Shown here in pieces: positions 11,666-47,819 of a stretch of 64,000 nucleotides of DNA. The stretch is from positions 62,001 to 126,000 of IMG/VR virus record IMGVR_UViG_3300037258_000590; one strand, given 5' to 3'. The number at the start of each line of letters is the position of its first letter. The first letter of the stretch is position 1. The notes beneath the pieces are model-generated. The model saw nothing but the letters and a program-made list of their open reading frames with translations. It searched no databases and was not told the DNA's origin. Both the position numbers and the translations under genes were made by a program.

Positions 11666-11669
11666 CCGC

Positions 11670-12353: not shown

Positions 12354-12355
12354 TC

Positions 12356-12985: not shown

Positions 12986-12989
12986 TCTA

Positions 12990-13207: not shown

Positions 13208-13211
13208 CTGA

Positions 13212-13284: not shown

Positions 13285-13322
13285 CAATTCCAGGGCGCTC
13301 ACGCTATGATCGTGGTTCCGTA

Positions 13323-13401: not shown

Positions 13402-13419
13402 ACTGACCGCGAAACAGTG

Positions 13420-13561
13420 TCTTCCGGTGCGCAGGCAAGCGGGTACTTCGCTGACCATCCAATTTCAGCGGGTAGCTCAGTGGCAGAGCACTCGGCTGAG
13501 CCGAGAGGTCGCGGGTTCGAATCCCGCCCTACGTCCCGCCGCCGATCTTGATCTCGGAAGA
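13420..13561 (+). ncRNA. Y RNA-like 2 (tRNA domain in canonical D-anticodon-T order)
   Basis: tcttccg/cggaaga terminal helix, CGGTGCGCAGG...TTGATCTCGG; internal TAGCTCAGTGGCAGAGC, 5-nt-loop arm and GGGTTCGAATCCC. Confidence 0.75.
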
Positions 13562-13587
13562 ATGCGCGTACAACTGAATACTCCGCA

Positions 13588-13700
13588 CCTCCCGGTGCGA
13601 TTGCTGCGGGTTACTTCGTGGTTCGATTCCGCGCAGTCAGCTTGCCTGGCTGCTGCCCGACTGGCTTGGGCTATCCTGCAGCGCCTTTGACCTCGGGAGG
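13588..13700 (+). ncRNA. Y RNA-like 3 (YrlA-type permuted T-AS-D)
   Basis: cctcccg/cgggagg helix; GGTTCGATTCC T-arm, closed acceptor-like hairpin, D-like arm. Confidence 0.7.
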
Positions 13701-13844: not shown

Positions 13845-13897
13845 TATCCGTGACGCCCGCTCCTCCTGCCAGCACAGCAAGCGAGAGGAGCATTTTC

Positions 13898-24266: not shown

Positions 24267-24905
24267 TCATGCGCGCTCTCCGGGCACGCAGGCCAGGTAC
24301 GTGCGCGGCGGCGGCCCGTACGGGACTTCGGTCACCTCGTAGCCGAGGCCGGCCAGCAGGTCCAGGCACTTGCCCTTGCTGCCGGAGGCGGCGGTGTACG
24401 GGTAGACCTCGGTATGGTCCTCGATCAGCAGCCTTGGCCGGAACCGGGTCAGCGCGGCGCGCCCGCTGCGCAGCACGCCCAGTTCAGCGCCTTCCACGTC
24501 GATCTTGATCCAGTCCAGCCAGGTCAGGCCCGTGGTTACAGCGTCGAGCGTGATCCAGGGCACGTCCCGCGGCGGGATCAGGTAGCTGTACGGTGAGGCC
24601 TCCAGCGCCGCGCGCATATCCGCAGGATACCCGGCTGTATCGAAGACAGCGGCGTTGCGGACGGTGTACCAGGTCAGCTGGTTGAGCCGTGCGACCCGTT
24701 CCAGCTTGGCCGTCGCGCCGGCATCGGGATCCACGGCGAGCACCCGGGCGCCCGCCATCAGGGCCGGGATCGTGTAGCTGCCGACCGCGGCGCCGAGATC
24801 GATCACGGTGTCGCCTGCCTGCGGATGCCAGTACGCGTCCCGGACGTCCTGCTCGTCGGCGTACGCGGCGGCCAGCCCCGGCTCGTCCGGCAGCAGGATG
24901 CCCAT
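24267..24905 (-). CDS. FkbM-family methyltransferase (paralog)
   Basis: VIDLGAAVGSYT, IKIDVEGAE. Confidence 0.85.
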   Translation of the reverse strand: MGILLPDEPGLAAAYADEQDVRDAYWHPQAGDTVIDLGAAVGSYTIPALMAGARVLAVDPDAGATAKLERVARLNQLTWYTVRNAAVFDTAGYPADMRAALEASPYSYLIPPRDVPWITLDAVTTGLTWLDWIKIDVEGAELGVLRSGRAALTRFRPRLLIEDHTEVYPYTAASGSKGKCLDLLAGLGYEVTEVPYGPPPRTYLACVPGERA

Positions 24906-25549
24906 CAGCAGCTCCCTTCGGTGTCCAGCACGGTCAGCCAAGGATAAGCGGGCAGCGGCTGGATAGCGGCGAGGAGCAGCGGACGGCGGCGCGTCCGGTG
25001 GGAGTCGGTGCTGGAGAACTGGTACCTGTACATGACTTCGGGGATCCAGGCTTCCTCGCGGACGAGCCCGGTAGCGCGGATAGCGGCGGCCCACCGGTAA
25101 TCCTCGCTGTCGCCGCCGTCGAAGCGCGCCATGACGGCGATGTCACGGCGGACCGGGTTCAGGTGAGAGATGTCCCGGACCAGCCGTTCTGGCCAGTCGT
25201 GCCAGCCGTCGTACCGGATGGAATGCTCGGCGCGCTGGGCGGGCAGGCCGTCCACGGTGCAGTCGACCATGAAGCCCACGTAGTCCGGGCGGGCGCCCAG
25301 CTCGGACAGCACCCGGAACGTGAACTGCGGGGAAACCCAGTCGTCATCGTCGGCGAAGCTGACGTACCCGGCAGAGCTGGCTTCGGTCAGCGCCTGCCGT
25401 TTCACCGCGACGGGCGCGGTCAGGTTGTCACGGTACAGCAGGGCCCCGAACCCGGGGCGGGCCTGGGCATCCAGGCTGGCCAGCAGCCCGCACAGCTGTT
25501 CGTGCCGGTGCGGGATGGTGGCGATGAGCAGCTGCCACAGCAAGCTCAT
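24905..25549 (-). CDS. GT2-like glycosyltransferase
   Basis: LIATIPHR, YVSFADDDD, SEDY. Confidence 0.8.
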   Translation of the reverse strand: MSLLWQLLIATIPHRHEQLCGLLASLDAQARPGFGALLYRDNLTAPVAVKRQALTEASSAGYVSFADDDDWVSPQFTFRVLSELGARPDYVGFMVDCTVDGLPAQRAEHSIRYDGWHDWPERLVRDISHLNPVRRDIAVMARFDGGDSEDYRWAAAIRATGLVREEAWIPEVMYRYQFSSTDSHRTRRRPLLLAAIQPLPAYPWLTVLDTEGSC

Positions 25550-26196
25550 GTGCCGAACCTGCGCAGCCACGGGTAGGCGGGGAGTCCCGGCAGCGTCCCG
25601 GATACCGGCTGGCGGGCGGTCTGGAACGTATCCGCGGTGCTCTCCCGGTAGTAGTACATCGCGTCCGGGATCCAGGCTTCGGTGCGGCACCGGCCGGTCG
25701 CGCGGATCCCGGCCGCCCATGCGACCTCGGCCCCGTAGCCGCCGTCGAACGGGACGAGCAGCGCGATCTCCCGGCGTACGGGGTTCTTCTCGCTGATGTC
25801 GCGTTCCAGGCACTGGTCGCTGGCACCCCAGCCGGGGTACCGCAGCGAGTGCTCTACCCGGCGCTGCAGCGCTCCGTCGCGAGTCCACCGGACCGGGTAG
25901 CCCACGTAGTCCGGGCGGTCCCGCAGCGCGGCGGTGACCCGGGCCACGAAATCCGGGGCCACCATGTCATCGTCGTCCACGCAGGACACGTACTCCGCGC
26001 CGGAGTTCTCGATCAGCACCTGGGTCTTGTACCCGTAACTGTGCTCCAGGTTGTCCCGGTACAGCAGCACGCCGACCTCGCCGCGAGCCGCCGGCAGCTG
26101 CCGGCCCAGCTCGGCCAGCAGCTCGCACAGCAGCCCGTGCCGGTGCGGGATCGAGGTGATCAGGATGTCGTAGGAAGGATACGGGCCGCCGGTCAT
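25546..26196 (-). CDS. GT2-like glycosyltransferase (paralog)
   Basis: LITSIPHR, YVSCVDDDD; 4-nt overlap with the next gene. Confidence 0.8.
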   Translation of the reverse strand: MTGGPYPSYDILITSIPHRHGLLCELLAELGRQLPAARGEVGVLLYRDNLEHSYGYKTQVLIENSGAEYVSCVDDDDMVAPDFVARVTAALRDRPDYVGYPVRWTRDGALQRRVEHSLRYPGWGASDQCLERDISEKNPVRREIALLVPFDGGYGAEVAWAAGIRATGRCRTEAWIPDAMYYYRESTADTFQTARQPVSGTLPGLPAYPWLRRFGT

Positions 26197-26525
26197 GCCA
26201 CCGCGGCCCTCGCCTGTTCCAGTTCTTCGATGTTGCTGCCGTTGACGGGAAGTGCCCAGATCCGGTCGTCTGCGTACCGGGGATGTTCCGGCGGCAATGT
26301 CTTCAGCCGGAAATGGCCCAGCCGCCGGATGTCCTCCCATTTCTCGATCCACCGGCCGCCTCGCGACCGGGCCAGCACCCGGACACGCCCAGGCAGGTTC
26401 CCGCCGAGCTGAGGGATGACATACGCCCTGGCCCCCGCGGCCACTGCACTGACCGAGACAACGTAATTGCAGGCGATCACCTGACGGTCCGCGCTCCGGC
26501 CGGCTGGTTCCTGGTTCGCGATCAT
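26193..26525 (-). CDS. Hypothetical protein
   Basis: 4-nt overlaps on both sides. Confidence 0.5.
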   Translation of the reverse strand: MIANQEPAGRSADRQVIACNYVVSVSAVAAGARAYVIPQLGGNLPGRVRVLARSRGGRWIEKWEDIRRLGHFRLKTLPPEHPRYADDRIWALPVNGSNIEELEQARAAVA

Positions 26526-27070
26526 GTCAGGATCGGCACGTCCAGCCTGATCGTGTCCCGCTCGTACTCCGTGGCGGCCCGCGGCCCGCGGGTGAGCACC
26601 AGGACAATGCAGTCGGTGACGGCCTTCCAGGCGTGCGGGATGCCAGCCGGCTCGCGGATGAAATCGCAGGCCTGGGCGTCCCGGGTGTGCACGCCGTCAT
26701 CTTCAAGCCAGGCGACCTGCAGCTGCCCGGATACGACGTAGGTCCACTGCGTGGTCAGCTTGTGGACGTGATTGCCGCGCACGGCGCCGGCCCGGGTGAT
26801 GATCTCGGTGACCGCATCAGCGTGCCCGAGCAGGTCCTGGATGCGCCCTCGCTCGTCGGTGAACTGGCCAAGCTCCAGCTGCGCGGTACCGCCAGGTGCG
26901 GTAGCAGCCTCGGCGAGGATGGCCCGCCTGAGCGATTCCAGCTGGGCGGTCGCCAGCTGGCCGTCACCGAGGATGTCGCCGTAGGTGCCTGCGATGACGT
27001 CCCAGACAGCCATGCCAGCCGCCCGTCCGGCCTTTTCCAGGGCGTCGTCGTCGGGATAGCGGTCAGCCAT
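26522..27070 (-). CDS. Cupin, WxcM/FdtA-like NDP-sugar isomerase
   Basis: DERG, RGNHVH...QWTYVVSG, PAGIPHAW. Confidence 0.7.
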   Translation of the reverse strand: MADRYPDDDALEKAGRAAGMAVWDVIAGTYGDILGDGQLATAQLESLRRAILAEAATAPGGTAQLELGQFTDERGRIQDLLGHADAVTEIITRAGAVRGNHVHKLTTQWTYVVSGQLQVAWLEDDGVHTRDAQACDFIREPAGIPHAWKAVTDCIVLVLTRGPRAATEYERDTIRLDVPILT

Positions 27071-27356
27071 CGTGCGGGTCCTCTCGTCCGGCGCGCCAGT
27101 GCCAGGTGCCGCCCGGATAGTCCCGGCCGCCGCACAGGTCCTGGCGCAGTTCTCCTGGGTTCAGTGACCGGCCCTCGTGTCCCGGGCCGGCGGCAAAGGC
27201 GTCCCGTCGTAAGGCCAGTACCAGGCGATGGTGCACAGGCCGTTGATGATGCCTGCCGGCAGGCCGGGCGGCATCCAGGCCTGCGGACCCGGGGTCAGGG
27301 TTACCCGCCCGCCGCGCGGCTGCGCGATCGGGTCCAGGGCGATCCGGAGCGGGATA

Positions 27357-28487
27357 TCAGCCATGCCACAGCCTGGCATGCGGGAGCGGGACGATGAACT
27401 GGCCTTCGTACCCGGCGGCGCGCAGCTTGGGCGCGATGTCGCCGGCGATGTGCCAGGCGAGCAGCAGCGCGTACGGCGGCTGGGCCTGCATCAGCTCGGC
27501 CTCGTCCACGATGGGTACGGCGGTGCCGGGCAGCATGGTGCCGATCTTGTCTGAGCCGGCCACCTCGGCGATCTTGCTCAGGCAGGAGGCGATACCCGCC
27601 CAGTGCACGAGCGGGGTGGCCCGGGTGGACGCGCTGATCCCCCAGACCGGGCCGGCCCCGGCGGCCTTCTCCATCAGCTGGAGCAGGTACCTGCGGGCGG
27701 TGTCGGCACGGGGCTGCAGGTGCCCGCTGTCCAGCCAGGCGGCCCAGGTGCGGAACGAGCCGCCGTGAACCGGGACGTGCTCGACCCGTTCCGGGACCAG
27801 GCCGTGCATGGCCAGCGCGGCGAGCAGCGTGCCGGGGGTGTAGAACCGCAGGTGCTCGTGGTACACGGTGTCGACCTGCAGGCCGTTCACGACCGAGGCC
27901 CAGTCGTGATTCTCGGTGATGAACGTGCCGCCCTCATCGAGCAGGCTGGTGACCCCGGCGAGGAAATCATGCTGGTCGCCGGCGTGAGCGAGTACATTGC
28001 ACGCGACGATCACCCGGGCCTTGCCGAGCCAGCGGGCGATGTCCCGGGCCAGGGCGGCGGACCAGAAGGACTGCTGGACCGGGATGGCCTTGCGGCGCGC
28101 CCTGGCCGCCTGGCCGGTCGGTTCCACGGCCAGCAGCCGGGCCCCGGGCGCGTGGTGCCGGACCGCTTCCAGCAGCGTCCCGTCATTAGCGCCGATGTCG
28201 ACCACCAGGTCTCCCGGCTTCAGCCCGGCGGCGATGTCCGCGGCCAGCGCGCCGAAATGGCGGCGCATCGCGGCGGAGTTCCCGGTGGTGTACGGGTGAT
28301 TTTCCGGGAACACCTGCTCCCGGTCCGGGGCGTAGGTCAGCTGGGCCAGGCCGCACCGGGCGCATTCGGCGACGGCCAGCGGGTAGCGGTGCCCGTCGTC
28401 CCGCTCGGCCAGCGGCTGCTCTCCCATGTCCAGCACCACGTCCAGCCGCGGGTCTCCGCAGGTTCCGCAGCTCGTGACCTCACCCAC
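27357..28487 (-). CDS. NDP-hexose C-methyltransferase-like protein
   Basis: N-terminal CGTC...CARC Zn site, VVDIGANDG, YHEHLRFY, HGGS, C-terminal LLLAW..FIVPLP. Confidence 0.8.
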   Translation of the reverse strand: MGEVTSCGTCGDPRLDVVLDMGEQPLAERDDGHRYPLAVAECARCGLAQLTYAPDREQVFPENHPYTTGNSAAMRRHFGALAADIAAGLKPGDLVVDIGANDGTLLEAVRHHAPGARLLAVEPTGQAARARRKAIPVQQSFWSAALARDIARWLGKARVIVACNVLAHAGDQHDFLAGVTSLLDEGGTFITENHDWASVVNGLQVDTVYHEHLRFYTPGTLLAALAMHGLVPERVEHVPVHGGSFRTWAAWLDSGHLQPRADTARRYLLQLMEKAAGAGPVWGISASTRATPLVHWAGIASCLSKIAEVAGSDKIGTMLPGTAVPIVDEAELMQAQPPYALLLAWHIAGDIAPKLRAAGYEGQFIVPLPHARLWHG

Positions 28488-28716
28488 GGGCGGCCTCCGC
28501 GGGCGGCTTGACCCAGGGGAACCGGGCGGTGACGTCGCTGCCGGGTTCTTCGGTGATGGCGTCCCAGCCGCCCGGCGCGAACACGGCCACCGGGTCAGCA
28601 GAGCCGGCCGGGTACAGGTGCAGGTAACCGCCCGCCTGCAGGAACCTGTTCGCGAGCACGACGGCCGTGCCGCCAGCCTGGTTCCGGGTGAGCCAGGCCC
28701 GCAGGCGGTCAGCCAT
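28480..28716 (-). CDS. Hypothetical protein
   Basis: Overlaps both neighbours. Confidence 0.4.
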   Translation of the reverse strand: MADRLRAWLTRNQAGGTAVVLANRFLQAGGYLHLYPAGSADPVAVFAPGGWDAITEEPGSDVTARFPWVKPPAEAARG

Positions 28717-29665
28717 GGGCCTGGTACCAGGAGACCGTCTGGCTGAGCCCGTACTCGAACGGGGTGACGGTGAGCGCGGCGCCCGCCAGGTCGTAGATCT
28801 TGGCCAGGTCAGGCAGGCGCCGGGGCGGTGAGCCCTTGGGCAGGCTGCCGGGCAGCAGCTTGATCTCGCGGCCGTAGCACTCCGCGACCGCGTGCGCGAC
28901 CCCGGCGATAGTCATCTCGTTCGCGGTACCGACGTTGTAGATGCCGGTGATCGCGCGGTCCAGCAGCAGGGCCAGCTGGCTGGTGCAGTCGCCGACCCAG
29001 CAGAACGAGCGGGTCTCCTGCCCCGTGCCCTGAACCGGGAACGTGATGACGCCGCTGGCGGCCTCGGCGGTCAGGTCGTTCATCCGGATGCAGAATTCCG
29101 GGATGACGTGCTCGCGGCCCATGTCGGGACCGTAGATGTTGTGCGGCCGGGCGATCACCGCCCGGTCCAGGACCCCGGCGCGTTCCCAGGCCAGGGCGGC
29201 CAGCTCGCAGGCGATCTTGCCGCCGCCGTAGCTGTACCGCATGTTGAGCGGGTCCGGGACGGTCAGCGGGACGGTCTCCGGGGTCGGCACCGTGGCGGCG
29301 ACCTGGTAGGCCTCGCTGGAGGACACCAGGAGAAGGTCGCCGCACCCGGTCGCCTGGCAGGCGTCCAGCACGGAGAGCATCCCGCGCAGGGCCACGTCGA
29401 GCACGGCCCGCGGCTCGGCGTAGAACGTCTGGGTGCCCTGGAGGTAGGCCAGGTGGGCCACGGCGTCGCAGCCGTGCATGGCGTCACGCACGGCATCAGC
29501 GTCGCGGATGTCGCCGGGAATGACCTCGATCCCGGAGCCGTCCAGGCGGGAGCGCTTGCCCCGGCTCATGTCATCGAAGACCCGCACCTCATGACCCGCG
29601 GCGGCCAGCTTGCGGGACAGGGCGCTGCCGATGAAGCCGGCGCCGCCGGTCACCATTATCTTCAT
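28709..29665 (-). CDS. NAD-dependent sugar epimerase/dehydratase
   Basis: TGGAGFIG, VSSSEAY, YGGGK, RPHNIYGP. Confidence 0.88.
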   Translation of the reverse strand: MKIMVTGGAGFIGSALSRKLAAAGHEVRVFDDMSRGKRSRLDGSGIEVIPGDIRDADAVRDAMHGCDAVAHLAYLQGTQTFYAEPRAVLDVALRGMLSVLDACQATGCGDLLLVSSSEAYQVAATVPTPETVPLTVPDPLNMRYSYGGGKIACELAALAWERAGVLDRAVIARPHNIYGPDMGREHVIPEFCIRMNDLTAEAASGVITFPVQGTGQETRSFCWVGDCTSQLALLLDRAITGIYNVGTANEMTIAGVAHAVAECYGREIKLLPGSLPKGSPPRRLPDLAKIYDLAGAALTVTPFEYGLSQTVSWYQAHG

Positions 29666-31251: not shown

Positions 31252-31815
31252 TCAGCCCGCTACCGCCCGGCCGCCGCGCAGCACCCGGCCGCCGCCCGGC
31301 TGGAACCGGCCTGACCCGGCCGCAGGCTCGTTGCCCTTGATCCCGGGCAGCTGCGGGCCGCCGGAAGCGTAACCGTCATCGTTGGCTGCGGTCCAGTCCG
31401 CGGACCCGGACACCGAGTCGCGCACGGTGTCCTGGGCGTAGCTGCCGGAGCCGAACGAGCCGGGGCGGGTGAAAGTGACCGCATCGGGCCCGGTGCCGCC
31501 GCTGGGAGTGGTGCCCTGGGTGCCGGGCGCTCCGGTGCCGTTGATGTCGGCGGGCGCCAGGCCGGTGAGGCCGTCGACCGTCTGGCCGGCTTCCACGGTG
31601 TCGTCATCGCCAGCTCCGCCGCCGCCTGCGGTGCCGGGTGCCCCGGTGCCCTGCGGGAGCTGGCCGCCGAAGATCATGCCGCCCCAGCCGCCGGGCGGGT
31701 ACTGGCCGGCCTCGTTGGTCGGGTCGGCGGGCCCCTGGTCGTTCCCGGAGATCTTCGGGCCGCCGGAGATGCGCTTGGTGCTGTCGTAGCCGGGGACCTG
31801 AGTGCTGCTGGTCAC
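31252..31815 (-). CDS. Gly/Pro/Thr-rich hypothetical protein
   Basis: 187-aa ORF, GGAG RBS. Confidence 0.55.
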   Translation of the reverse strand: MTSSTQVPGYDSTKRISGGPKISGNDQGPADPTNEAGQYPPGGWGGMIFGGQLPQGTGAPGTAGGGGAGDDDTVEAGQTVDGLTGLAPADINGTGAPGTQGTTPSGGTGPDAVTFTRPGSFGSGSYAQDTVRDSVSGSADWTAANDDGYASGGPQLPGIKGNEPAAGSGRFQPGGGRVLRGGRAVAG

Positions 31816-32009: not shown

Positions 32010-33497
32010 GTCGCATCCCGCACCCAGCTCAGGGCCTGCTGCCAATTGCGGCCTAAGCCCGGACCGGAAGCGGGAATGAATGAGGCCGTCGCACCCCCGC
32101 ACCCAGCTCAGGGCCTGCTGCCAGGCGCGTACCTGTGGCCGTGGTCGCACCTCATGCCCAGCTCAGGCCCTGCTGCCAGACCCGTTCGGGCTCGGCTACT
32201 TCGTCGGGGGTCGCACCTCATACCCAGCTCAGGCTCCGTTGCCAGGCTGTGCAGCTCACTGTCGCACCTCATACCCAGCTCAGGCTCCGTTGCCAGTGAC
32301 GGCGTGCCCGCGCGGCGGTCATCTGGGCAACCCCGTCGCACCTCATACCCAGCTCAGGCTCCGTTGCCAGCCTCCCACTGGAAGGCGCGCCTACGGCTAC
32401 AATGCAGTCGCACCTAATGCCCAGCTCAGGCTCCGTTGCCAGGCCAGGCGGATACTTCTGCGCAAGGTTCCAGCATGTCTGGGGGTCGCACCTCATACCC
32501 AGCTCAGGCTCCGTTGCCAGTCGCAACCAGTCGGCAGCGGTATACCTGCCGTTCTGCAGTCGCACCGCATGCTCAGCTCAGGCTCCGTTGCCAGCAGAAG
32601 ACGACCCGAATCTTAAGGTTGCGCTCCTGGTCGCACCTCATGCCCAGCTCAGGCTCCGTTGCCAGCTCCGGACGCCCAGGCCTTAATCCCAGGCGTCCGG
32701 AGCGTCGCACCTCATGCCCAGCTCAGGCTCCGTTGCCAGCCCGGGTCATGTCCCACCTCATGCCCAGCTCAGGCTCCGTTGCCAGCCTCAGCACCCTTGA
32801 GCGCATCGCGGCGGATCCGCCGTCGCACCTCATGCCCAGCTCAGGCTCCGTTGCCAGCCGCCCCGGCCAGTCCCACGTCGCCTTGGCGTCGCATCTCATG
32901 CCCAGCTCAGGCTCGGTTGCCAGACGTATTTCTTCCCGCCTAGGGCGACTGCTCGCAGCAGTCGCACCTCATGCCCAGCTCAGGCTCCGTTGCCAGGATC
33001 TCGACCATCTCGCCGGCGAGCACGCGACTCGTGTCGCACCTCATGCCCAGCTCAGGCTCCGTTGCCAGCCCCCGGCCGGACTTTGGCGAGGCTAAGCAGT
33101 CGCACCTCATGCCCAGCTCAGGCTCCGTTGCCAGGACCAGGGCATTTTCGCATGCCCGGGGGAGACACTAGTCGCACCTCATGCCCAGCTCAGGCCCCGT
33201 TGCCAGTGTGGCGCCTGTAGGTTGCCTGACATGGAGATGCGCGTCGCACCTCATGCCCAGCTCAGGCTCCGTTGCCAGCGAAGGCCAGCGCGTGACCGTG
33301 CTGACCACGGAGGTAGTCGCACCTCATGCCCAGCTCAGGCTCCGTTGCCAGCCGGACCCGTGGCCCCCCGCCATCCCGCCGGCGCCGGTCGCACCTCATG
33401 CCCAGCTCAGGCTCCGTTGCCAGCGGCGATATCGCGGACCTGGCTGATTTCAGGCTGACCAGTCGCACCTCATGCCCAGCTCAGGCTCCGTTGCCAG
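32010..33497 (-). CRISPR. CRISPR array, 22 repeats (36 nt) and 21 spacers
   Basis: Consensus (minus) CTGGCAACGGAGCCTGAGCTGGGCATGAGGTGCGAC; unique spacers mostly 30-42 nt, three of 10, 15 and 19 nt; degenerate repeats at the left (trailer) end. Confidence 0.98.
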
Positions 33498-35133
33498 GGC
33501 TCCGCTTTCGCGTCTGCCGCGACCTGCGGCGTTCCGGCGGCTTGCGAGCACCTACCCGGCCATAGGCTCCCGGGATAAGGTTCTCAGTCAGCCCGGCGTA
33601 ACCCCTCTCCTGACCTGGGTGCGAGCGCTCCCCGGAGGGAGACTCCGCGCCTGGGTGCTCGCCTGGCGATGTCACTATTGAGTTGGGTAGCGAGTTGACG
33701 GGCTGCTGGCTGACGCCGAGGCATGTCTCCCGTCCTGCCACGGCCTGCGCTGCCGCGGTATACCGATCCAGTATATTCCGGGCCGCGACCACATCGGCAT
33801 GGCCTTCGAGCCCGCAGCGCACGCACCGGAACGTGTCCCGGTCCGGGCGGTTTGCCGCGTCGACATGCCCGCAGCGCGGGCATGTCTGCGAGGTGTACGC
33901 GGCCGGGACGGCAGCCACCTGCGTCTTGTACGCGGTGAACTGCATCACCTGATACCAGTTCCTGGCCAGGATCGCGCGGTTGAGCCCGGCTTTAGCCCGG
34001 ACCTGCGAGCCTGGCTGTTCCGCCGTGCCCCTGGCTGAGCTGGTCATCGCGGACACGTCAAGATCTTCCATGACCACCATCGCGTACCGGTCGGCAAGAG
34101 CGCGAGAAGCCAGGTGCGCTCCCGCAGTGCGCTGGCGGACCTGGCGCTGGCTGAGCTTGAGGTACGCCAGCTTGTCCCGGGCGTACCGGGCCGAATGCTT
34201 CCAGCAGCCGCAATCGTGGGCGGGATGACCCGGCGGTGGGCAGTAATGCCGGATCAGCTTGCTCCGGCCGCGCACGGTAACCCACACGTCGTGCCGGCAC
34301 GGGTTCAGGCGGCGCTTGCGGCTCAGGGTACGCTGCAGCCGGTCCTTGCGCTGCTGCTGTCCCGCAGACAAGACGGGCGTGTGATAAGCAGCCCCGTCTG
34401 CGGTGGCGATAGTGACGGCTACGCCGCGGTCGACCCCGGTAATGCCGCCAGCCGCGGGTTGCCGTACCTGGGCGGTGTCGTACTGCAGCAGCACCCAGTA
34501 ACGGCCCAGCGCATCAGCGCGCAGCACCGCGAACCTGACCAGGGTGTCGGCGGGCAGTTCCCGGTGATACCGGATACGGATCACGCCGATGACACCCGGC
34601 ACGCGGAATTCGGCGGTTGCCGGGCGGCTCCCGGTCGCTTTCCCGGTCACGATCACGGTCTTGCCCAGCGGACGCGGGCCGTTCTCGCCCTTCACCTGCC
34701 AGTACAGCGAACCGCCCCGGTGCACCGAACGAAAACGCGGCGGGCTGGACGGGCACCGCTGGCCGGGTGCGTGCGGATTCCGGTTCCACCCGGCCAGCGC
34801 TTTGAGATGCCTGGTCCAGGACCCGGACAGCTGCCGCAAAGCGCCGTACAGGAAAACCGCCGGCACGTCCGCGATCAGCCGCAAGCCGCCCTGGTACGGG
34901 AACTCCACGCCAGCCTGACGGGCAGCCGTTACCGCGTAGGAAAGCCGCTGCTTGTACGTCTCTACCGGAACATGATGCCGGTACCGGTCGAGCTGTGACG
35001 CGGCAGCCTCGTTGTAGAACCAGGTGACGCCGGCGTGGCAGAACCTGAACGCGGTTTCCTGCTCCGCGGTAAGCATGGCGGCGTAGGCCTGAGCGCGGAT
35101 ATGCCGGCCAGCATCTTTGCCAGGCGGGGTCAC
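33481..35133 (-). CDS. Compact type V CRISPR effector, TnpB-derived (Cas12n/C2c9-like)
   Basis: RuvC-I GVDRGV, RuvC-II VMEDL, CPRC/CVRC Zn finger, RuvC-III ADVVAARNI; stop codon inside first repeat; no tnpA or cas1/2; subtype is inference. Confidence 0.8.
   Translation of the reverse strand: MTPPGKDAGRHIRAQAYAAMLTAEQETAFRFCHAGVTWFYNEAAASQLDRYRHHVPVETYKQRLSYAVTAARQAGVEFPYQGGLRLIADVPAVFLYGALRQLSGSWTRHLKALAGWNRNPHAPGQRCPSSPPRFRSVHRGGSLYWQVKGENGPRPLGKTVIVTGKATGSRPATAEFRVPGVIGVIRIRYHRELPADTLVRFAVLRADALGRYWVLLQYDTAQVRQPAAGGITGVDRGVAVTIATADGAAYHTPVLSAGQQQRKDRLQRTLSRKRRLNPCRHDVWVTVRGRSKLIRHYCPPPGHPAHDCGCWKHSARYARDKLAYLKLSQRQVRQRTAGAHLASRALADRYAMVVMEDLDVSAMTSSARGTAEQPGSQVRAKAGLNRAILARNWYQVMQFTAYKTQVAAVPAAYTSQTCPRCGHVDAANRPDRDTFRCVRCGLEGHADVVAARNILDRYTAAAQAVAGRETCLGVSQQPVNSLPNSIVTSPGEHPGAESPSGERSHPGQERGYAGLTENLIPGAYGRVGARKPPERRRSRQTRKRSPGNGA
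33609..33625 (-). ncRNA. Candidate anti-repeat (tracrRNA/omegaRNA-like) inside effector 3' CDS
   Basis: Minus-strand CUCGCACCCAGGUCAGG can pair with repeat blocks UGCGA, CUGGG and CCUGA. Confidence 0.5.
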
Positions 35134-35354
35134 CGGCCCGCACCTGCTGCCAGGCAGCGCTCTACCTCCGCCAGGCTGGCACCTGTCTGCTCATCGCCGG
35201 CCAGCAGCCTGCCCTCCGCGTTGCGCAGGTACCAGCGCCCGTAGCCGAGCGCGCGAGGGTCACGCCGCCGGAGCTTAGCCAGGCGCAGCCCCTGCCGGGC
35301 GGCAGCGCGCCGGGAACGGTTCTCCCGGGTCATCAGCGTGTAGTCGCGAGTCAC
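35130..35354 (-). CDS. Small basic protein translationally coupled to the Cas12-like gene
   Basis: GTGA overlap at 35130-35133; Arg-rich. Confidence 0.5.
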   Translation of the reverse strand: MTRDYTLMTRENRSRRAAARQGLRLAKLRRRDPRALGYGRWYLRNAEGRLLAGDEQTGASLAEVERCLAAGAGR

Positions 35355-36000: not shown

Positions 36001-36600
36001 TCAGAGCCGGCCGCCGTACCGGCTCATCAGGTCCGCCTTGGTCATCGCGGCGGCCTTGTCCTGATCGGCGCCCTGGCTGACCGCCCAGTCGATCCAGGCG
36101 GCCTTGGGAGCGGCGGGACCCGGCGCGACAGGCGCTGGCGTCACGGCATCCGGCTCGCCGGGTTCCTGCACCTGGTCGTCGTCCCCGGCGCCTGCCTCGG
36201 CCCCGTCGTCCCCGGCGCCTGCCTCGGCCCCGTCGTCCCCGGCGTCGAGGTAGCCGGGCGGCTCCGGCACATCGCCCGGCACCGCATCCGCGGCCAGGGC
36301 TTCGGCGGCCAGCCGCTCGCCCTCAACCTGGCTGGCCGGGCGGCCGTCGAGCTTGGACGGGTGGCCCGGCCGCGGGCCTTCGAAGTCGTCCCGCAGCATG
36401 TCCCAGAGCGCTTCCGCGTCCTTGCCGTACGGCGCGGCCAGCTCGGCCCGGATCAGGTCCGCGCCTTCAGCGTCAGGCACGTCCAGTGTCGCGTCCACGG
36501 GCGGCCACCGCTCGCCGTTGCGATGCCCGGAGATCCCGATCCGCATCCGTACCAGCATGGCTGTTCCCTCCGGGATAGCACCTTGCTCCTGTAATGGCAT
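36001..36600 (-). CDS. Phage protein downstream of capsid gene
   Basis: Acidic linker with 27-bp tandem repeat; C-terminal KAAWIDWAVSQG..MTKADL; start uncertain. Confidence 0.6.
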   Translation of the reverse strand: MPLQEQGAIPEGTAMLVRMRIGISGHRNGERWPPVDATLDVPDAEGADLIRAELAAPYGKDAEALWDMLRDDFEGPRPGHPSKLDGRPASQVEGERLAAEALAADAVPGDVPEPPGYLDAGDDGAEAGAGDDGAEAGAGDDDQVQEPGEPDAVTPAPVAPGPAAPKAAWIDWAVSQGADQDKAAAMTKADLMSRYGGRL

Positions 36601-42533: not shown

Positions 42534-42571
42534 CTGCGTAACAGGTGCAGGAGCGAAGACAGGAGACCATC

Positions 42572-43435
42572 ATGAGCAGAACCAAAGCTGAGACGTACGT
42601 GCTGGACTGGCGGGTGAGCGCCCGGCTGAAGCAGCTGCGCCTCGCCGCCGGCATGACGGGTACCGATGTAGCGGCCAAGGCCGGGATATCGTCATCCAAG
42701 GTCGCCCGGATAGAACTGGGCAGGAATGCCTTTCCGCTCTCCGACCTGCGCGTACTGCTCAAGCTCTACGGGCTGGAGGAGCACGGCGACGAGACGCAGC
42801 ACATCGTGGACCTGGCGGCCAGTTCCGCGGAACCGCACCTCGGCGTCAAAGGTTCCCCGCGGACTTCGGCGTCCGGAGTCCTGCGCGAGACCTGCACCGA
42901 GATCAGGCTCTGGGCGCCGGAGGTGCTGCCGCCGCCGCTGCGCACGGAAGCCTACGAACGCGCGCTTGCCACGGCAGTGCAGGACCTGACCGGCCAGCTG
43001 CCATCTGAGGTGGCGAGAGCCGCGAAGACAGCGGCAGCCTGGTCGGACCGGGTGAGCGCCCGCAGAGGCGCGCTCCCGGTGCGCGCGGTCATCGACGCGA
43101 CGACCCTGCGGCGTACGGTGGGATCTGCGGCGATCATGCGCGATCAGGTCAGTTACCTGGTCATGCTGACCCAGGAGCCCGGAATTACGCTGCTGGTGCT
43201 GCCCCTTGGCGCGCTAGCCCCCCGCGGGACCAGCGCCTTCACGTGGATGCGGTTCAGCGACGTGCAGGGCACGCGGACGCCGGATGCCGTGATCTTTGAT
43301 GACATCACGGCCCCGGAATTCAGGATCACGAACGAGGAGCAGGTGACGTACAGGTGTGCCCGCACGTTCGGGATGCTGGAGAACGCGGCCGAGAACCCGG
43401 CTGCCGCCTTGGCCGCGGCGGGGAAAGCCTGGTGA
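42572..43435 (+). CDS. XRE HTH + DUF5753-like actinobacterial regulator
   Basis: RLKQLRLAAGMT..DVA..AGIS.SKVARIELG; LRTEAY, AVIDATTLRRTVG..MRDQ. Confidence 0.8.
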   Translation: MSRTKAETYVLDWRVSARLKQLRLAAGMTGTDVAAKAGISSSKVARIELGRNAFPLSDLRVLLKLYGLEEHGDETQHIVDLAASSAEPHLGVKGSPRTSASGVLRETCTEIRLWAPEVLPPPLRTEAYERALATAVQDLTGQLPSEVARAAKTAAAWSDRVSARRGALPVRAVIDATTLRRTVGSAAIMRDQVSYLVMLTQEPGITLLVLPLGALAPRGTSAFTWMRFSDVQGTRTPDAVIFDDITAPEFRITNEEQVTYRCARTFGMLENAAENPAAALAAAGKAW

Positions 43436-45011: not shown

Positions 45012-47819
45012 TCACCGGACAGACCTTCCCGGATCGTAGTGGCGGCGGCGCTTGTTCAGTGCCCACAAGGCGAGCGTGGCTGCGGTGACCGGCGTGATGT
45101 CGGATTCGCTGTCGCGCCGGGACCAGGCTTTGCCGCCGTCGCCGACGACGCGGGTCTCGGCCCTGGCCACCGCGTGCCACATGCCAGGGGCGTTTTCCTG
45201 GCCGAAGTGGATCAGGCGCTTCCCGGGAACGGTGCTGCGGACGCTGGCGACAATGAAAGCGAACGCGGCTGCTTCGTCCGCGCTGGATGCGGTCAGGACC
45301 TCGATGCCGGCTTTGACCGCATCATCGATCAGGCCGGCGGCAGGCCCGTTCTTCGGCATCGCGATGACAATCGGCCGCCAGGCCTTGCGCAGCTCGGTCA
45401 GCCGTGGGATGACCCAGGAGACGCCCTCGCGGTGGCAGCCTTGCGGGATCTCCGCAACCGGCCGCTCGGGCTCGGCCAGGGCGAGACGCACGGCCAGCGC
45501 CTCCGGCGTGCCAGCGCGGGCGGCCATCATGGCGGCGATCTCGGTCTCGATCCCGGCGCGGGAGGGCCCGGGTACGGCAGGCCGGTACCAGGCAGCGGCG
45601 ATCGACGCGCTGAGCATGTCGGGGTCGACATCCACAGCGAACGCGATAGGCCGTGTCGTGCCGCCGGGATCGGCGATGGTGCAGGCTTCCCACTGCTCGC
45701 GGGAGATCACCGACCAGGCTTCGTCTTCGGTGGGCCAGTCGCCGACGCCGAGCCGTTCCCGGTCGAAGGCCTGGGCGCTCATCGCCTCCATTTCCTTGGC
45801 GACATGCTGGACGGAAATCCGGGTGCCGAGCGCGGGATTGGCCTTGGCCCAGGACCGCGGGTCATCCCGGTCGTCATGCAGGGCGCAGGTGACGTAGTGG
45901 TTGGTGACCCGGCCGCGCAGCTCATCTCGCGGGCAGCTGTCCAGGTGCGGGCTGACCGACCATTCAGCGCCCATCAGGCTGGCGTCATTGCGGAGCACCC
46001 GGCGCCGTACCGAGCCGAGCTGGACGGAATCCTTATAGCCGGCGGAGGCGGTGTAGATCATCTGCGGATTAGGGACGGCGCTCATGGTCGGCATCGACGC
46101 GCCGACCTGATCGTCGCTGAGGATCATAGCTTCGTCGTAGATCACCGCGTCGGCGGTGAATGACCGGCCGGAACCACGAGAGCGGGCCAGGAACCGGAGC
46201 CGCGGGGTGATCGAGCGGCGGATCATCGCGCCCGTCGAGCCGAAGATCAAGGTGGGGACCGAGCGCAGTTCGATGGCCTCGTCGCCATGGGACGTGGTGA
46301 TCGACTTGACCCGCTTGCGCAGCTCGTCGTAGGCGGTGATGGTGTCGCGGACCCGGCGGAAGTGCTCAGCGGCGGCCTTGAATTCGTGCGCGGTATGGAT
46401 CAGCATTTTCTCGCCGAACACGAACAGGCCGCCGAGTTCCCGGACTTCGAGGCAGTTGTGCGTCGGAGTGAACGTGTGCCCGAGCAGGAACACGCCGTCT
46501 TTCGCGACGACGGTAATGCACCGGACCGGCACCGAGGGCACCGGCCGGACATCAGTGATGCTCATCAGCTCATGCCGCCGGGATACGGGGAACCGCCAGC
46601 GCTCGGCCTTGCGAGGGAGAGCGAACGGGTTAAACGAGGGCGTCCACAAGAACCTGGCCTGATCCCGGTGCGGCTGGCCATTCAGTGACACAGGGCGATC
46701 CCGGCGCGCTACCCGGATACCGAGACTCCGGGCCAGCCGGTGGAATCCCTCCGCGATCCGGGGATTCGACGCCGTGAACTCCGCCTGGGGCGATTTGTTC
46801 GTGATGGCGATAGAGCCATCTGAGTCCATCAGCCCGCGCAGCAGCGCCAGCCGCTGAACCGGGGAGGCCGTCAGGTAGATCTCCGGGATGTGCTTATCGC
46901 CCCAGACGCCTAGGCGCCGGCAGCGTGACTCGAATCCGTCGCGCATGCGGCCGAGGGTGATGCGAACATCCCATACGCCGCGCAAGGCCTGCTCCCGGGC
47001 ACTGGCCTTTGCTCCAGCTGCGCTCACGAGTGCCTGAACCCATTCCAGGTCTGCCTTGCCGCACGTAATGACAGGACCTTTCGCGTACCCGTCGCCCAGC
47101 CAGTATCCGAGCAGGTACGGGTCAACTGGCAAGGCAGCCTCGGGTGTATCGGGCACCGCGTCGCACCGCACCCGGTAACGGTAGGCCTTCCGGCCCGTAT
47201 CCCGCGGGGGGAAGGCGAAGTCGCCGGCGATTCTTCCCGTAGTGAGATCCTGCCACCGGCCCCTGGTGTCCCTGACGTGCCAGAGGTGATCTTCATCAGC
47301 GGTATACACCGACCCGTCAGTAAACGTCACGGCGTAACACGGCCGGTCCCGGAAAACGCCGGTTACCGCCGTGACCCGCGTCGGCTGGCCGTCCGATCCG
47401 TACACGAAATCTCCGGGGAGCAGAGCACCTATTGCCTGCCAGCCCCGGTTTACTGTCAGTACCGGTGTAATGACAGAAATCGCCTGATTTTTCCCGTTCT
47501 GGCGGCTGACGATGAGCATGCACTCGAATGCGGCCCATTTGCCGTCCGGCTGGGTACCGCAGGCCTCGGTCAGCCACCATTGCTGCCACGGGTCCAGGTC
47601 GTAGCCGAAACCGGCACCCCAGTCCAGCAGGTCGCTGCTCTGGTAATCCCCGCACCCGCAGGCGTAATCGCGGTTGTCACAGGAAACGCAGGCCGGGTTC
47701 TTCTCCCGGTGCCTCGGCGGCGCGGTCCAGAATCTCGGCTCCTGGCTGCCGGTGAGCCCGCGCAGGACCTGGCCGCCAGGCAGGATAAAGTCCGGCACGA
47801 CCCGCAGCGTGACAGGCAT
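45012..47819 (-). CDS. terL: Terminase large subunit with intein
   Basis: DPWQ, Walker A SRQNGK, HTAH, GRSFTAD.VIYDEAM, ANPALG, FDRERLG, FAVDVDPD, SDITPV.A. Confidence 0.93.
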   Translation of the reverse strand: MPVTLRVVPDFILPGGQVLRGLTGSQEPRFWTAPPRHREKNPACVSCDNRDYACGCGDYQSSDLLDWGAGFGYDLDPWQQWWLTEACGTQPDGKWAAFECMLIVSRQNGKNQAISVITPVLTVNRGWQAIGALLPGDFVYGSDGQPTRVTAVTGVFRDRPCYAVTFTDGSVYTADEDHLWHVRDTRGRWQDLTTGRIAGDFAFPPRDTGRKAYRYRVRCDAVPDTPEAALPVDPYLLGYWLGDGYAKGPVITCGKADLEWVQALVSAAGAKASAREQALRGVWDVRITLGRMRDGFESRCRRLGVWGDKHIPEIYLTASPVQRLALLRGLMDSDGSIAITNKSPQAEFTASNPRIAEGFHRLARSLGIRVARRDRPVSLNGQPHRDQARFLWTPSFNPFALPRKAERWRFPVSRRHELMSITDVRPVPSVPVRCITVVAKDGVFLLGHTFTPTHNCLEVRELGGLFVFGEKMLIHTAHEFKAAAEHFRRVRDTITAYDELRKRVKSITTSHGDEAIELRSVPTLIFGSTGAMIRRSITPRLRFLARSRGSGRSFTADAVIYDEAMILSDDQVGASMPTMSAVPNPQMIYTASAGYKDSVQLGSVRRRVLRNDASLMGAEWSVSPHLDSCPRDELRGRVTNHYVTCALHDDRDDPRSWAKANPALGTRISVQHVAKEMEAMSAQAFDRERLGVGDWPTEDEAWSVISREQWEACTIADPGGTTRPIAFAVDVDPDMLSASIAAAWYRPAVPGPSRAGIETEIAAMMAARAGTPEALAVRLALAEPERPVAEIPQGCHREGVSWVIPRLTELRKAWRPIVIAMPKNGPAAGLIDDAVKAGIEVLTASSADEAAAFAFIVASVRSTVPGKRLIHFGQENAPGMWHAVARAETRVVGDGGKAWSRRDSESDITPVTAATLALWALNKRRRHYDPGRSVR
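46455..47483 (-). mobile_element. Class 3 intein with LAGLIDADG endonuclease in TerL (343 aa)
   Basis: Starts with Ala (AISV); block B DEDHLW, block F VRCITV, block G PTHN, Cys+1; LLGYWLGDG and LLRGLMDSDG. Confidence 0.88.

What the first reader, a model, noticed from the sequence alone, without database searches (positions are those of the whole stretch)
32010..35354. Phage-borne TnpB-to-Cas12 intermediate: effector stop codon lies inside the first CRISPR repeat, no adaptation genes
Seen: a 550-aa protein with all three RuvC acidic residues (GVDRG, MEDL, ADVVAARN) and a CPRC/CVRC finger reads directly into repeat 1 (CTGGCAACGGAGCC-TGA). It is followed by 22 repeats with unique spacers, degenerate at the distal end. 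No cas1/cas2/cas4, tnpA or IS ends are visible. Known: type V effectors arose repeatedly from TnpB, and compact V-U forms such as Cas12n/C2c9 occur in actinobacteria. Inference: a catalytically intact miniature nuclease whose guide array replaced the TnpB right-end guide, used against competing elements and sitting inside the head-gene region.
Basis: partly seen in the sequence, partly recalled or inferred. Interest (0 to 1): 0.9.

Follow-up and report, generated by a model that had tools for sequence, protein, structure and literature searches.

The report
Phage miniature TnpB-like CRISPR system
A 210-kb phage of high-GC actinobacteria carries a small, intact TnpB-like RNA-guided nuclease gene that ends inside the first repeat of a 22-repeat CRISPR array and whose tail also encodes the guide-RNA scaffold. 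The system is real and probably working, of the already described 'TnpB-to-Cas12 intermediate' kind, not a new category.

Summary
A 550-aa ORF (33481-35133, minus strand) has an intact RuvC D-E-D triad and a CxxC/CxxC finger. Its TGA stop lies inside repeat 1 of a co-oriented array of 22 repeats (36 nt) and 21 different spacers, degenerate at the far end. The window is phage: terminase, portal, protease, capsid and connector lie just upstream. None of 59 further ORFs is Cas1, Cas2, Cas4 or TnpA.

New here:
- The protein belongs to a small, distinct clade, about 16 clusters among 1.84 billion representatives. It is found mostly on phage- or plasmid-like contigs and in 2 of 185,579 species genomes.
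- In nearly all members a motif ending in GCGAC sits 8-25 nt past the stop.
- Repeat number ranges from 1 to 22.
- The disordered ORF tail overlaps a conserved structured RNA. The repeat's 3' end pairs with two half-sites flanking a hairpin, with compensatory changes.

This matches the TnpB/Cas12n pseudoknot scaffold.

Membership in Cas12n itself is not shown, because ordinary TnpBs score higher on the Cas12n-type (Cas12u4) model. No protospacer was found, so targets, PAM and biological role remain inferred. Verdict: a new member of a known kind, of moderate interest.

The parts
33481..35133 (-). Effector gene: 550-aa TnpB-fold RNA-guided nuclease (GTG start, TGA stop)
   Evidence: ORF and translation. 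Pfam Cas12f1-like_TNB 5.9e-17. NCBIfam guided_TnpB 139 bits against cut-off 100. AF2 model pLDDT 78. Foldseek top hits are TnpB and Cas12f.
34429..34431 (-). RuvC-I aspartate codon (D235, in GVDRG)
   Evidence: Invariant in 33 of 33 family members.
34066..34068 (-). RuvC-II glutamate codon (E356, in MEDL)
   Evidence: Invariant in 33 of 33.
33793..33795 (-). RuvC-III aspartate codon (D447, in GHADVVAARN)
   Evidence: Invariant in 33 of 33.
33814..33882 (-). Zinc-finger (TNB) segment, C418-x2-C421 ... C437-x2-C440
   Evidence: Pfam PF07282 covers residues 393-454. C418, C437 and C440 are invariant and C421 is at least 90% conserved.
33484..33744 (-). Codons 464-550: mostly disordered C-terminal tail, dual-coding with the guide-RNA scaffold
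   Evidence: pLDDT is below 50 for residues 464-513 and 529-550. GC3 falls to 0.70-0.72 and GC2 rises to as much as 0.66 (0.58 and 0.66 in the two tail blocks). The nucleotide sequence is conserved across loci.
33462..33758 (-). Predicted omega/tracr-like RNA scaffold (about 297 nt) running from hairpin P0 to the end of repeat 1
   Evidence: RNAalifold on 14 loci. Own pair counts: 97.8% of cells paired and 9 of 20 pairs with changes on both sides, against 33-49% and at most 2 for slid controls. No Rfam family matches.
33738..33758 (-). Hairpin P0. Its loop holds anti-repeat half-site A (GCGC, 33747-33750).
   Evidence: All 51 cells paired, one compensatory pair. Half-site A varies GCGC/GCGU together with repeat-end GUGC/AUGC.
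33697..33734 (-). Hairpin P1 (three nested stems)
   Evidence: Six of 12 pairs show changes on both sides with no broken pairs.
33691..33694 (-). Anti-repeat half-site B (CUCG)
   Evidence: Pairs with UGAG of the repeat. Variants CUCU/CCCU/CGCU go with AGAG/AGGG/AGCG in other loci.
33462..33497 (-). Repeat 1. It holds the effector's last five codons and the TGA stop. Bases 33465-33472 (UGAGGUGC) pair with the two half-sites.
   Evidence: Sequence. The same overlap, with the repeat ending 18-19 nt past the stop, is seen in L003, L004, L050 and L051.
32010..33497 (-). CRISPR array: 22 repeats of 36 nt (R21 is 37 nt) and 21 different spacers
   Evidence: 20 matches against 0 expected.
32010..32179 (-). 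Degenerate distal repeats: R20 (32144-32179, 3 mismatches), R21 (32088-32124, with indel) and R22 (32010-32045, 10 mismatches)
35130..35354 (-). 74-aa ORF of unknown function. Its stop overlaps the effector's GTG start by 4 nt (context; suggests co-transcription with the head operon).
   Evidence: No Pfam, NCBIfam or PHROG match. The window copy lacks the promoter-like motif seen upstream of other family members.

Best explanation
This is an adaptation-less, TnpB-derived type V-like CRISPR system carried by a roughly 210-kb actinobacterial phage. The 550-aa protein is a catalytically intact RuvC nuclease with a TnpB-like core of about 460 aa and a disordered tail.

The last ~300 nt of its mRNA double as the guide-RNA scaffold. 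They contain two hairpins (P0, P1) flanked by two 4-nt anti-repeat half-sites. The eight bases UGAGGUGC, which lie three bases before each spacer, pair with these half-sites. This is the same pseudoknot logic as in TnpB omega-RNA and the Cas12n sgRNA.

Repeat 1 is physically continuous with the scaffold. The first unit is therefore a natural single guide, like a TnpB right-end RNA. Repeats 2-22 would give crRNAs that pair with the same scaffold in trans, which then acts as a tracrRNA cut from the mRNA. The array probably arose by duplication of the last 36 nt of the scaffold.

Shown by computation: gene integrity, fold, conservation of the catalytic residues, array anatomy, RNA covariation, absence of cas1/2/4 and tnpA in the window, the phage setting, and the 1-to-22 repeat series among relatives.

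Inferred: RNA processing, use of the scaffold in trans, DNA cleavage, and the role. The most likely role is interference with competing phages or plasmids in the same host, as proposed for other phage-encoded compact type V systems. How spacers are acquired is unknown.
For: Gene and motifs.

Fold: TM 0.73-0.77 (target-normalised) to TnpB structures 8h1j and 8iaz. The tail is disordered.

Array.

ORF-repeat overlap: conserved in relatives, where a motif ending in GCGAC ends 8-25 nt past the stop in most of the loci checked.

RNA: alifold structure with 9 compensatory pairs. Own statistics: 97.8% paired against 33-49% when slid, 0 of 1000 shuffles reach the paired fraction, and 5 of 1000 reach the number of compensatory pairs. 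The two repeat-end variants (GAGGTGCGAC and GGGATGCGAC) covary with their half-sites.

Published parallel: in the RdCas12n sgRNA, nucleotides -4 to -2 pair with a segment next to stem 1, and the tracrRNA overlaps the ORF's disordered tail (PMC12216341).

Family: monophyletic against sampled TnpBs, SH-aLRT 97, and small. It sits on contigs with ParA/ParB, TraG, WhiB or a large serine recombinase.

No adaptation genes or TnpA: and the Pfam columns.

Phage context.
Against: - No protospacer was found for any spacer. Searched: annotated phages and plasmids, the window and all fetched loci, and IMG/VR for four spacers.
- No PAM can therefore be derived and no target class is known.
- No expression data exist, and no promoter or terminator was detected by simple scans.
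- One relative's array is identical in 8 samples, so there is no sign of ongoing spacer uptake.
- Three spacers are truncated (10, 15 and 19 nt), so parts of the array are decaying.
- A tracr-type duplex with the 5' half of the repeat was not found.
- The trans mode for repeats 2-22 rests only on the 8-nt pairing.
Confidence: 0.72

Rival explanations
1. It is simply a divergent member of the described Cas12n (type V-N, formerly V-U4/c2c9) family. It would then share Cas12n's properties: monomer, tracrRNA plus crRNA, and a 5'-AAN PAM.
For: - RdCas12n (9j09) is the best solved-structure sequence hit: 3e-14 for the protein and 1.2e-25 for the family profile.
- Cas12u4 is the best PADLOC model, 8.4e-40.
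- Size: 550 aa against the published Cas12n mean of 544, or 485 without the tail (bioRxiv 10.64898/2026.03.27.714800).
- It has a disordered tail overlapping the RNA scaffold and comes from actinobacteria, as published for Cas12n (PMC12216341).
- The pseudoknot logic is the same.
Against: - The hits are not specific. Ordinary ~400-aa actinobacterial TnpBs score 218-225 bits on the Cas12u4 model, against 135 for this protein.
- One such TnpB scores 118 bits to RdCas12n, against 56 for this protein.
- Only the C-terminal RuvC half aligns to RdCas12n.
- The resolved REC/WED lobe of 9j09 ranks 38th by Foldseek, TM 0.48, behind TnpB, Cas12f, LaTranC and Cas12m.
- No reference Cas12n sequences could be put in a tree here.
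Confidence: 0.25
2. It is still a selfish OMEGA/TnpB element. The repeats would be serial duplications of the transposon right end, and the guides would serve homing or retention of the element rather than defence.
For: - TnpB fold and family model.
- The scaffold overlaps the ORF end, as in omega-RNA.
- Close relatives have a single guide (L052, L062/L065).
- The module occurs in unrelated gene neighbourhoods.
- Omega-RNA-like arrays have been noted in the literature (PMC10691335).
Against: - No Y1 or small serine TnpA in the window or beside five relatives.
- Upstream regions share only a promoter-like motif and no left-end structure.
- One copy per contig. The element with most sightings always sits in the same context.
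- No spacer matches the window itself.
- 21 different spacers of regular length, about 36 nt, fit a CRISPR array better than nested transposon ends.
Confidence: 0.1
3. The system is used for regulation or host take-over rather than for cutting competitors. For example, guides would direct binding or cleavage at host or own-genome sites during infection.
For: - The gene sits in, and appears co-transcribed with, the late head operon. It has a 4-nt start/stop overlap and lacks the promoter-like motif of its relatives.
- Spacer GC content (67%) equals that of the phage.
- No mobile-element targets were found.
- Precedents exist: Cas12m, Cas12c and TldR repressors (PMC13565253).
Against: - The catalytic triad is invariant across the family, unlike repressor derivatives.
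- No spacer matches the 64-kb window.
- The host genome is unknown, so host targets could not be tested.
Confidence: 0.08
4. It is a decaying relic with no current function.
For: - Three truncated spacers and three degenerate distal repeats.
- No targets found.
- No spacer turnover in a relative.
Against: - An intact 550-aa ORF with all catalytic and zinc residues.
- 19 of 22 repeats have at most 2 mismatches.
- The scaffold pairings are intact in the window copy.
- Codon GC3 (0.80) is like that of neighbouring phage genes.
Confidence: 0.05

Closest known systems
Cas12n (type V-N; formerly V-U4 / c2c9), e.g. RdCas12n (PDB 9J09) and AcCas12n
   Same: - Miniature monomer-sized effector, 550 aa against a mean of 544.
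- Actinobacterial origin.
- Disordered C-terminal tail whose coding DNA also encodes the tracr/scaffold RNA.
- Array downstream and no adaptation genes.
- The nucleotides just before the guide pair with a segment next to stem 1 (pseudoknot).
- Best sequence hit among solved structures (PMC12216341).
   Different: - Sequence similarity is confined to the RuvC half and is lower than that of ordinary TnpBs to RdCas12n.
- REC/WED similarity is weak, TM 0.48.
- The stop codon lies inside repeat 1, making a contiguous natural single guide.
- The copy here is on a phage.
- The PAM is unknown.
IS200/IS605 and IS607 TnpB with omega (right-end) RNA
   Same: - Fold: TM 0.73-0.77 to 8h1j and 8iaz.
- D-E-D triad and zinc finger.
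- Scaffold RNA overlapping the 3' end of the ORF, with the guide starting just past the stop.
- Some relatives have a single guide.
   Different: - No TnpA, no recognisable ends and no multi-copy distribution.
- About 60 extra residues in the core plus a ~90-aa tail.
- The single guide is replaced or extended by up to 22 repeat-spacer units.
TranC (transposon-CRISPR intermediates; Jin et al., Cell 2025, as cited in PMC13565253) and the V-U6 to V-U45 groups of Altae-Tran et al. 2023 (PMC10691335)
   Same: TnpB-like effectors that became linked to downstream CRISPR arrays independently and without cas1/2/4. The concept is the splitting of omega-RNA into tracrRNA and crRNA. Some are phage-encoded, e.g. 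CauTranC9 (bioRxiv 10.64898/2026.03.27.714800).
   Different: - Whether this clade equals one of those numbered groups could not be tested, because no reference sequences are held.
- LaTranC is only a weak match: 36 bits, TM 0.51-0.57.
- The tested TranC clades were reported to lack a Cas12n-like unstructured tail carrying the tracrRNA, which this family has.
Compact type V systems of huge phages (Cas12j/CasPhi, Cas12l/CasLambda)
   Same: Encoded by large phages, lacking adaptation genes, and presumed to act against competing mobile elements.
   Different: Those effectors are 700-800 aa, use crRNA alone, and are only remote matches here: 39-40 bits for CasPhi and TM at most 0.33.

Membership tests
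Type V CRISPR effector in the broad sense (Cas12 / CRISPR-associated TnpB derivative) | Single RuvC-like nuclease domain with a D-E-D triad, plus a zinc-finger/TNB insertion | tested here: met
   D235, E356 and D447 are invariant in 33 of 33. CxxC...CxxC is conserved. TnpB/Cas12f fold.
Type V CRISPR effector in the broad sense (Cas12 / CRISPR-associated TnpB derivative) | Evolutionarily conserved adjacency to a co-oriented downstream CRISPR array | tested here: met
   22 repeats in the window. Arrays of 4-7 repeats with the same 3' end occur at the same position in L003, L004, L051, L007, L059 and L063. Three other relatives have only one unit.
Type V CRISPR effector in the broad sense (Cas12 / CRISPR-associated TnpB derivative) | crRNA-guided, PAM-dependent nucleic-acid targeting | not testable with these tools
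   No protospacers found. Biochemistry is needed.
Cas12n (type V-N / V-U4 / c2c9) | Groups with reference Cas12n proteins to the exclusion of TnpBs | tested here: inconclusive
   RdCas12n is the best PDB hit and Cas12u4 the best PADLOC model. However, ordinary TnpBs score higher on both: 218-225 against 135 bits, and 118 against 56 bits. No reference Cas12n sequences were available for the tree.
Cas12n (type V-N / V-U4 / c2c9) | Disordered C-terminal tail whose coding region contains the tracrRNA | tested here: met
   pLDDT below 50 for 464-513 and 529-550. Conserved, covarying RNA structure at 33462-33758. Feature as described in PMC12216341.
Cas12n (type V-N / V-U4 / c2c9) | A-rich 5'-AAN PAM | not testable with these tools
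   No protospacer found. A look-alike 'RHDV' motif (residues 280-283) lies after RuvC-I, not in the WED domain, so it is not the published PAM-reading motif.
Cas12n (type V-N / V-U4 / c2c9) | Expanded REC/WED lobe like RdCas12n | tested here: inconclusive
   Foldseek match to the resolved REC lobe of 9j09: TM 0.48 (target-normalised), rank 38, no better than TnpB or Cas12f.
IS200/IS605 or IS607 TnpB (OMEGA transposon nuclease) | TnpB sequence family and fold | tested here: met
   NCBIfam NF040570, 139 bits against cut-off 100. TM 0.73-0.77 to 8h1j and 8iaz.
IS200/IS605 or IS607 TnpB (OMEGA transposon nuclease) | Partner TnpA (Y1 or small serine recombinase) and/or transposon ends; mobile, multi-copy | tested here: not met
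   No TnpA in 59 window ORFs or beside relatives. No conserved left end. One context for the most-sighted element. The specific IS200_TnpB and IS607_TnpB models score 62 and 52 bits against cut-offs of 425 and 350.
IS200/IS605 or IS607 TnpB (OMEGA transposon nuclease) | Scaffold RNA overlapping the ORF 3' end, followed by a single guide | tested here: not met
   The scaffold overlap is present, but the window has 21 guides in an array. Only some relatives keep a single guide.
TranC / V-U* groups | Membership of a numbered published clade | not testable with these tools
   The primary paper and supplements are not held. LaTranC is only a remote match.
Canonical adaptive CRISPR-Cas locus | Adaptation module (cas1, cas2, with or without cas4) at the locus | tested here: not met
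   None among 59 ORFs in 64 kb. None within 6-8 kb either side of relatives L002-L006.

The most novel reading that the evidence does not exclude
This small clade may preserve, among proteins 60-70% identical to the window's, successive steps from a single cis omega-RNA guide to a 22-unit CRISPR array. The first unit is still fused to the scaffold and to the ORF's stop codon. If the arrays grow without Cas1-Cas2 (by repeat-mediated recombination, by the nuclease itself, or by borrowing host machinery), the family would offer a natural system for studying how CRISPR arrays are born from transposon RNAs and how spacers can be gained without an adaptation module.
Probability: 0.15. Interest if true: 0.85.

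Novelty: new member of a known kind. Interest (0 to 1): 0.5.

Why it matters
- It adds a well-delimited, mostly metagenomic clade of very small RNA-guided nucleases from high-GC actinobacterial phages and plasmids. The core is about 460 aa plus a dispensable-looking tail.
- A guide-RNA scaffold can already be predicted from covariation, which makes bench testing straightforward.
- The graded series of 1, 4-7 and 22 repeats, and the fusion of ORF end, scaffold and first repeat, illustrate the published model that type V arrays arise by duplication of the omega-RNA end.
- It extends the list of large phages that carry adaptation-less CRISPR systems.
- It does not change current concepts.

Tried and rejected
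1. PADLOC Cas12u4 and PDB RdCas12n top hits as proof of Cas12n membership. Rejected after controls: ordinary TnpBs score higher.

2. A 'repeat 0' inside the ORF tail. Its local similarity to the repeat is at chance level, since 48% of shuffles reach the score.

3. Searching for the anti-repeat with RNAduplex on single sequences. This gave GC-driven, inconsistent pairings. Only the comparative analysis was informative.

4. The 'RHDV' motif as the AcCas12n HHDV PAM reader. It is in the wrong domain, after RuvC-I.

5. Spacer targets. No hits at all, or only chance-level matches (E-values 0.1-0.4, or 15 nt or fewer), in:
   - annotated phages and plasmids
   - the window and 128 loci
   - other arrays' guides against the window and loci
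   - IMG/VR with 22-mers of spacers 1, 3, 4 and 13

6. The repeat pattern in IMG/VR matches only this contig.

7. Rfam gave no match. Simple promoter and terminator scans found none.

8. Spacer turnover among 8 samples of one relative: none.

9. Excess secondary structure in spacers is marginal (p about 0.03) and driven by one hairpin spacer.

10. Full-text search for family peptide motifs and the repeat end returned only unrelated primer matches. Supplements of the key papers are not held.

11. Megablast of the locus against phages gave no match. The capsid protein is at most 32% identical to any cultured phage.

Full report
**1. Observation**

The region contains a 550-aa ORF on the minus strand, 33481..35133, with a GTG start.
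- The translation shows GVDRG (D235), MEDL (E356), HADVVAARN (D447), CPRC (418-421) and CVRC (437-440).
- The last codons (CCT GGC AAC GGA GCC TGA) are the first 17 bases of a 36-nt repeat at 33497..33462, so the stop codon lies inside repeat 1.
- The repeat occurs 20 times with at most 3 mismatches, against 0 expected in shuffles.
- Two more degenerate copies follow: R21 at 32124..32088 and R22 at 32045..32010. The total is 22 repeats and 21 spacers, all different.
- Most spacers are 30-42 nt. Three are truncated (10, 15 and 19 nt).
- R1-R19 carry at most 2 mismatches. R20-R22 are degenerate, so the effector-proximal end is the conserved one.

**2. Setting**

- The window matches a 210,383-bp IMG/VR viral contig.
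- It has about 68% G+C and 39 tRNA genes.
- On the same strand, just upstream of the effector, lie a terminase large subunit with an intein-like insertion, portal, prohead protease, HK97-type capsid and head-tail connector. Sugar-modifying enzymes lie downstream.
- The capsid is at most 32% identical to that of any cultured phage, and the locus has no megablast match.
- The effector's GTG overlaps the stop of a 74-aa ORF by 4 nt. The window copy also lacks the promoter-like motif found upstream of its relatives. It is therefore probably transcribed with the head operon (inference).
- Fifty-nine other predicted ORFs in the window were scanned against Pfam and PADLOC. None matched Cas1, Cas2, Cas4, Y1 transposase or a small serine recombinase.

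**3. The protein**

- Pfam finds the Cas12f1-like TNB domain. NCBIfam's guided_TnpB model scores 139 bits against a cut-off of 100.
- An AlphaFold2 model built on the family alignment has mean pLDDT 78. Residues 11-471 are confident, while 464-513 and 529-550 fall below 50.
- Foldseek places the model next to ISDra2 and ISFba1 TnpB (target-normalised TM 0.73-0.77). Next come AsCas12f, LaTranC and Cas12m.

**4. The family**

- A word-indexed search found about 50 relatives of 43-72% identity and 500-590 aa. Below these, scores drop sharply to ordinary ~400-aa TnpBs that align over half the length.
- An exhaustive profile search of 1.84 billion cluster representatives gave only about 16 clusters with matches to the family at E below 1e-60 (several of them fragments). 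Scores then fall to about 207 bits for hits restricted to the RuvC half.
- A quick maximum-likelihood tree separates the family from sampled TnpBs (SH-aLRT 97) and puts the window protein in a 17-member subclade.
- D235, E356 and D447 are invariant in 33 of 33 sequences.
- Only two loci were found in 185,579 species genomes: a Streptosporangiaceae MAG and a partial copy in an uncultured actinomycete MAG. Besides the window's own contig, two family loci were found in IMG/VR.
- Neighbours on longer contigs include ParA/ParB, a TraG-type coupling protein, WhiB and a large serine recombinase. The carriers are therefore mobile elements.

**5. Arrays across the family**

- In most of the loci checked, a motif ending in GCGAC ends 8-25 nt after the stop codon. 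The motif is GAGGTGCGAC in the window's subclade and GGGATGCGAC in another.
- In L003, L004, L050 and L051 it ends 18-19 nt after the stop, with the stop inside the first repeat exactly as in the window.
- The number of units varies widely: one (L052, L062/L065), several short irregular units (L002, L005, L053), 4-7 regular 36-nt repeats (L003, L004, L051, L007, L059, L063), and 22 in the window, the largest seen.
- The ORF-repeat fusion is therefore a family trait, and array size is labile among proteins 60-70% identical to the window's.

**6. The RNA**

- Nucleotide alignment of the ORF tail plus first repeat from 14 distinct loci is strongly conserved.
- RNAalifold predicts a hairpin P1 (window 33734-33697) with three nested stems.
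- It also predicts pairing of UGAGGUGC near the repeat's 3' end (33472-33465) with two half-sites: GCGC (33750-33747) and CUCG (33694-33691).
- My own counts on these 20 pairs:
  - 97.8% of cells form standard pairs, and 9 pairs show changes on both sides.
  - With the partner slid by 1-3 columns the figures are 33-49% and at most 2.
  - None of 1000 column shuffles reaches the paired fraction.
- The half-sites follow the repeat-end variants. GCGC/GCGU pairs with GUGC/AUGC. CUCG, CUCU, CCCU and CGCU pair with UGAG, AGAG, AGGG and AGCG.
- Half-site A lies in the loop of a further hairpin, P0 (33758-33738). All cells are paired and one pair is compensatory. The arrangement is a pseudoknot.
- A variable middle hairpin also covaries and is deleted in some members.
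- In the tail, GC3 falls and GC2 rises, and the protein is predicted to be disordered there. This fits RNA rather than protein constraint.
- No Rfam family matches.
- Published RdCas12n work describes the same logic. The tracrRNA overlaps the ORF's disordered tail, and nucleotides -4 to -2 before the guide pair next to stem 1. This core is shared with TnpB and Cas12f (PMC12216341).

**7. Mechanism proposed**

- The tail of the mRNA is the scaffold.
- Because repeat 1 is contiguous with it, unit 1 is a natural single guide like a TnpB right-end RNA.
- Units 2-22 would supply crRNAs that use the same half-sites in trans.
- The nuclease, with its intact triad, would cut matching DNA next to an unknown PAM.
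- The array most simply arose by duplication of the last 36 nt of the scaffold, as proposed in general by Altae-Tran et al. (PMC10691335) and in the TranC work (cited in PMC13565253).
- These steps are inferred. RNA processing, trans use and cleavage were not and cannot be tested here.

**8. Role**

- No protospacer was found in annotated phages or plasmids, in the window or 128 fetched loci, or in IMG/VR for four spacers. The repeat occurs in IMG/VR only on this contig.
- Spacer G+C (67%) equals that of the phage.
- The array of one relative is identical in 8 samples.
- Interference with competing elements is the most plausible role by analogy with other phage-borne compact type V systems, but it is unsupported by direct evidence.

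**9. Classification**

RdCas12n is also the best solved-structure hit and Cas12u4 the best PADLOC model.
- Controls show these hits are not specific. Ordinary actinobacterial TnpBs score 218-225 bits on Cas12u4 against 135 for this protein. One such TnpB scores 118 bits to RdCas12n against 56.
- Only the RuvC half aligns to RdCas12n, and its REC lobe is a weak structural match.
- Membership in Cas12n is therefore inconclusive.
- Identity with a published TranC or V-U* group cannot be checked, because the reference data are not held.
- The family is not an ordinary IS605/IS607 TnpB, since TnpA, transposon ends and multi-copy behaviour are absent.

**10. Verdict**

- The system belongs to an already described kind: adaptation-less, TnpB-derived type V systems, some of them phage-borne.
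- I rate it a new member of that kind.
- The points of added interest are the conserved ORF-scaffold-repeat fusion, the covariation-supported scaffold, and the 1-to-22 repeat series.

Noticed in passing
window 5540-13285 (+) and 13850-15577 (+): A cluster of 39 tRNA genes is followed directly by a 575-aa ORF with a TROVE (Ro60-like) domain. Ro60-type proteins usually work with small Y RNAs, which were not looked for.
   Followed up: no
window 45012-47819 (-) and 17197-19359 (-): Two genes carry LAGLIDADG/homing-endonuclease insertions that look like inteins: the terminase large subunit (935 aa) and a glycosyltransferase (720 aa).
   Followed up: no
window 42545-43435 (+); L002:6270-7872; L004:9540-10953 and 13089-13620: An HTH_31 + DUF5753 protein is encoded in the window. 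The DUF6879 + HTH_31/DUF5753 gene pair lies next to effector homologues in two other elements. This may be a recurrent neighbour or an independent mobile-element module.
   Followed up: no
window 24267-29665 (-) and 3650-4735 (-): Several sugar-modification genes lie just downstream of the array and elsewhere: NAD-dependent epimerase, C-methyltransferase, FkbM methyltransferase and a GDP-mannose dehydratase-like gene. This suggests glycan or DNA-sugar modification by the phage.
   Followed up: no
window 32666-32703 (-), spacer 12: This spacer is a perfect 15-bp hairpin (-29.9 kcal/mol). Spacers overall are slightly more structured than random 36-mers of the window (p about 0.03), an effect driven by this one.
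   Followed up: partly
window 36177-36244: A perfect 27-nt tandem repeat (2.5 copies, 100% match) lies inside the head-tail connector ORF 36001-36600.
   Followed up: no
L003, L004, L005, L053, L055, L063: 25-40 nt upstream of the effector start: A shared -35/-10-like motif (ATGTCA or TTGTCA, then 17-18 nt, then TACGGT or GATCAT) precedes most family members but not the window copy.
   Followed up: partly
window 31252-31815 (-): A Gly/Pro/Thr-rich 187-aa ORF with short internal repeats follows the array. It has no family match.
   Followed up: no
window 48899-50185 (-) and 53605-54597 (-): Auxiliary nucleotide-metabolism genes: adenylosuccinate synthetase and ThyX.
   Followed up: no
L045 (IMGVR_UViG_3300036820_000002, 130 kb): A 46%-identical homologue on another large viral contig shows no GCGAC-type repeat within about 2.2 kb downstream of the gene; the only motif match lies 2,194 nt past the stop. 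Its guide region was not worked out.
   Followed up: no
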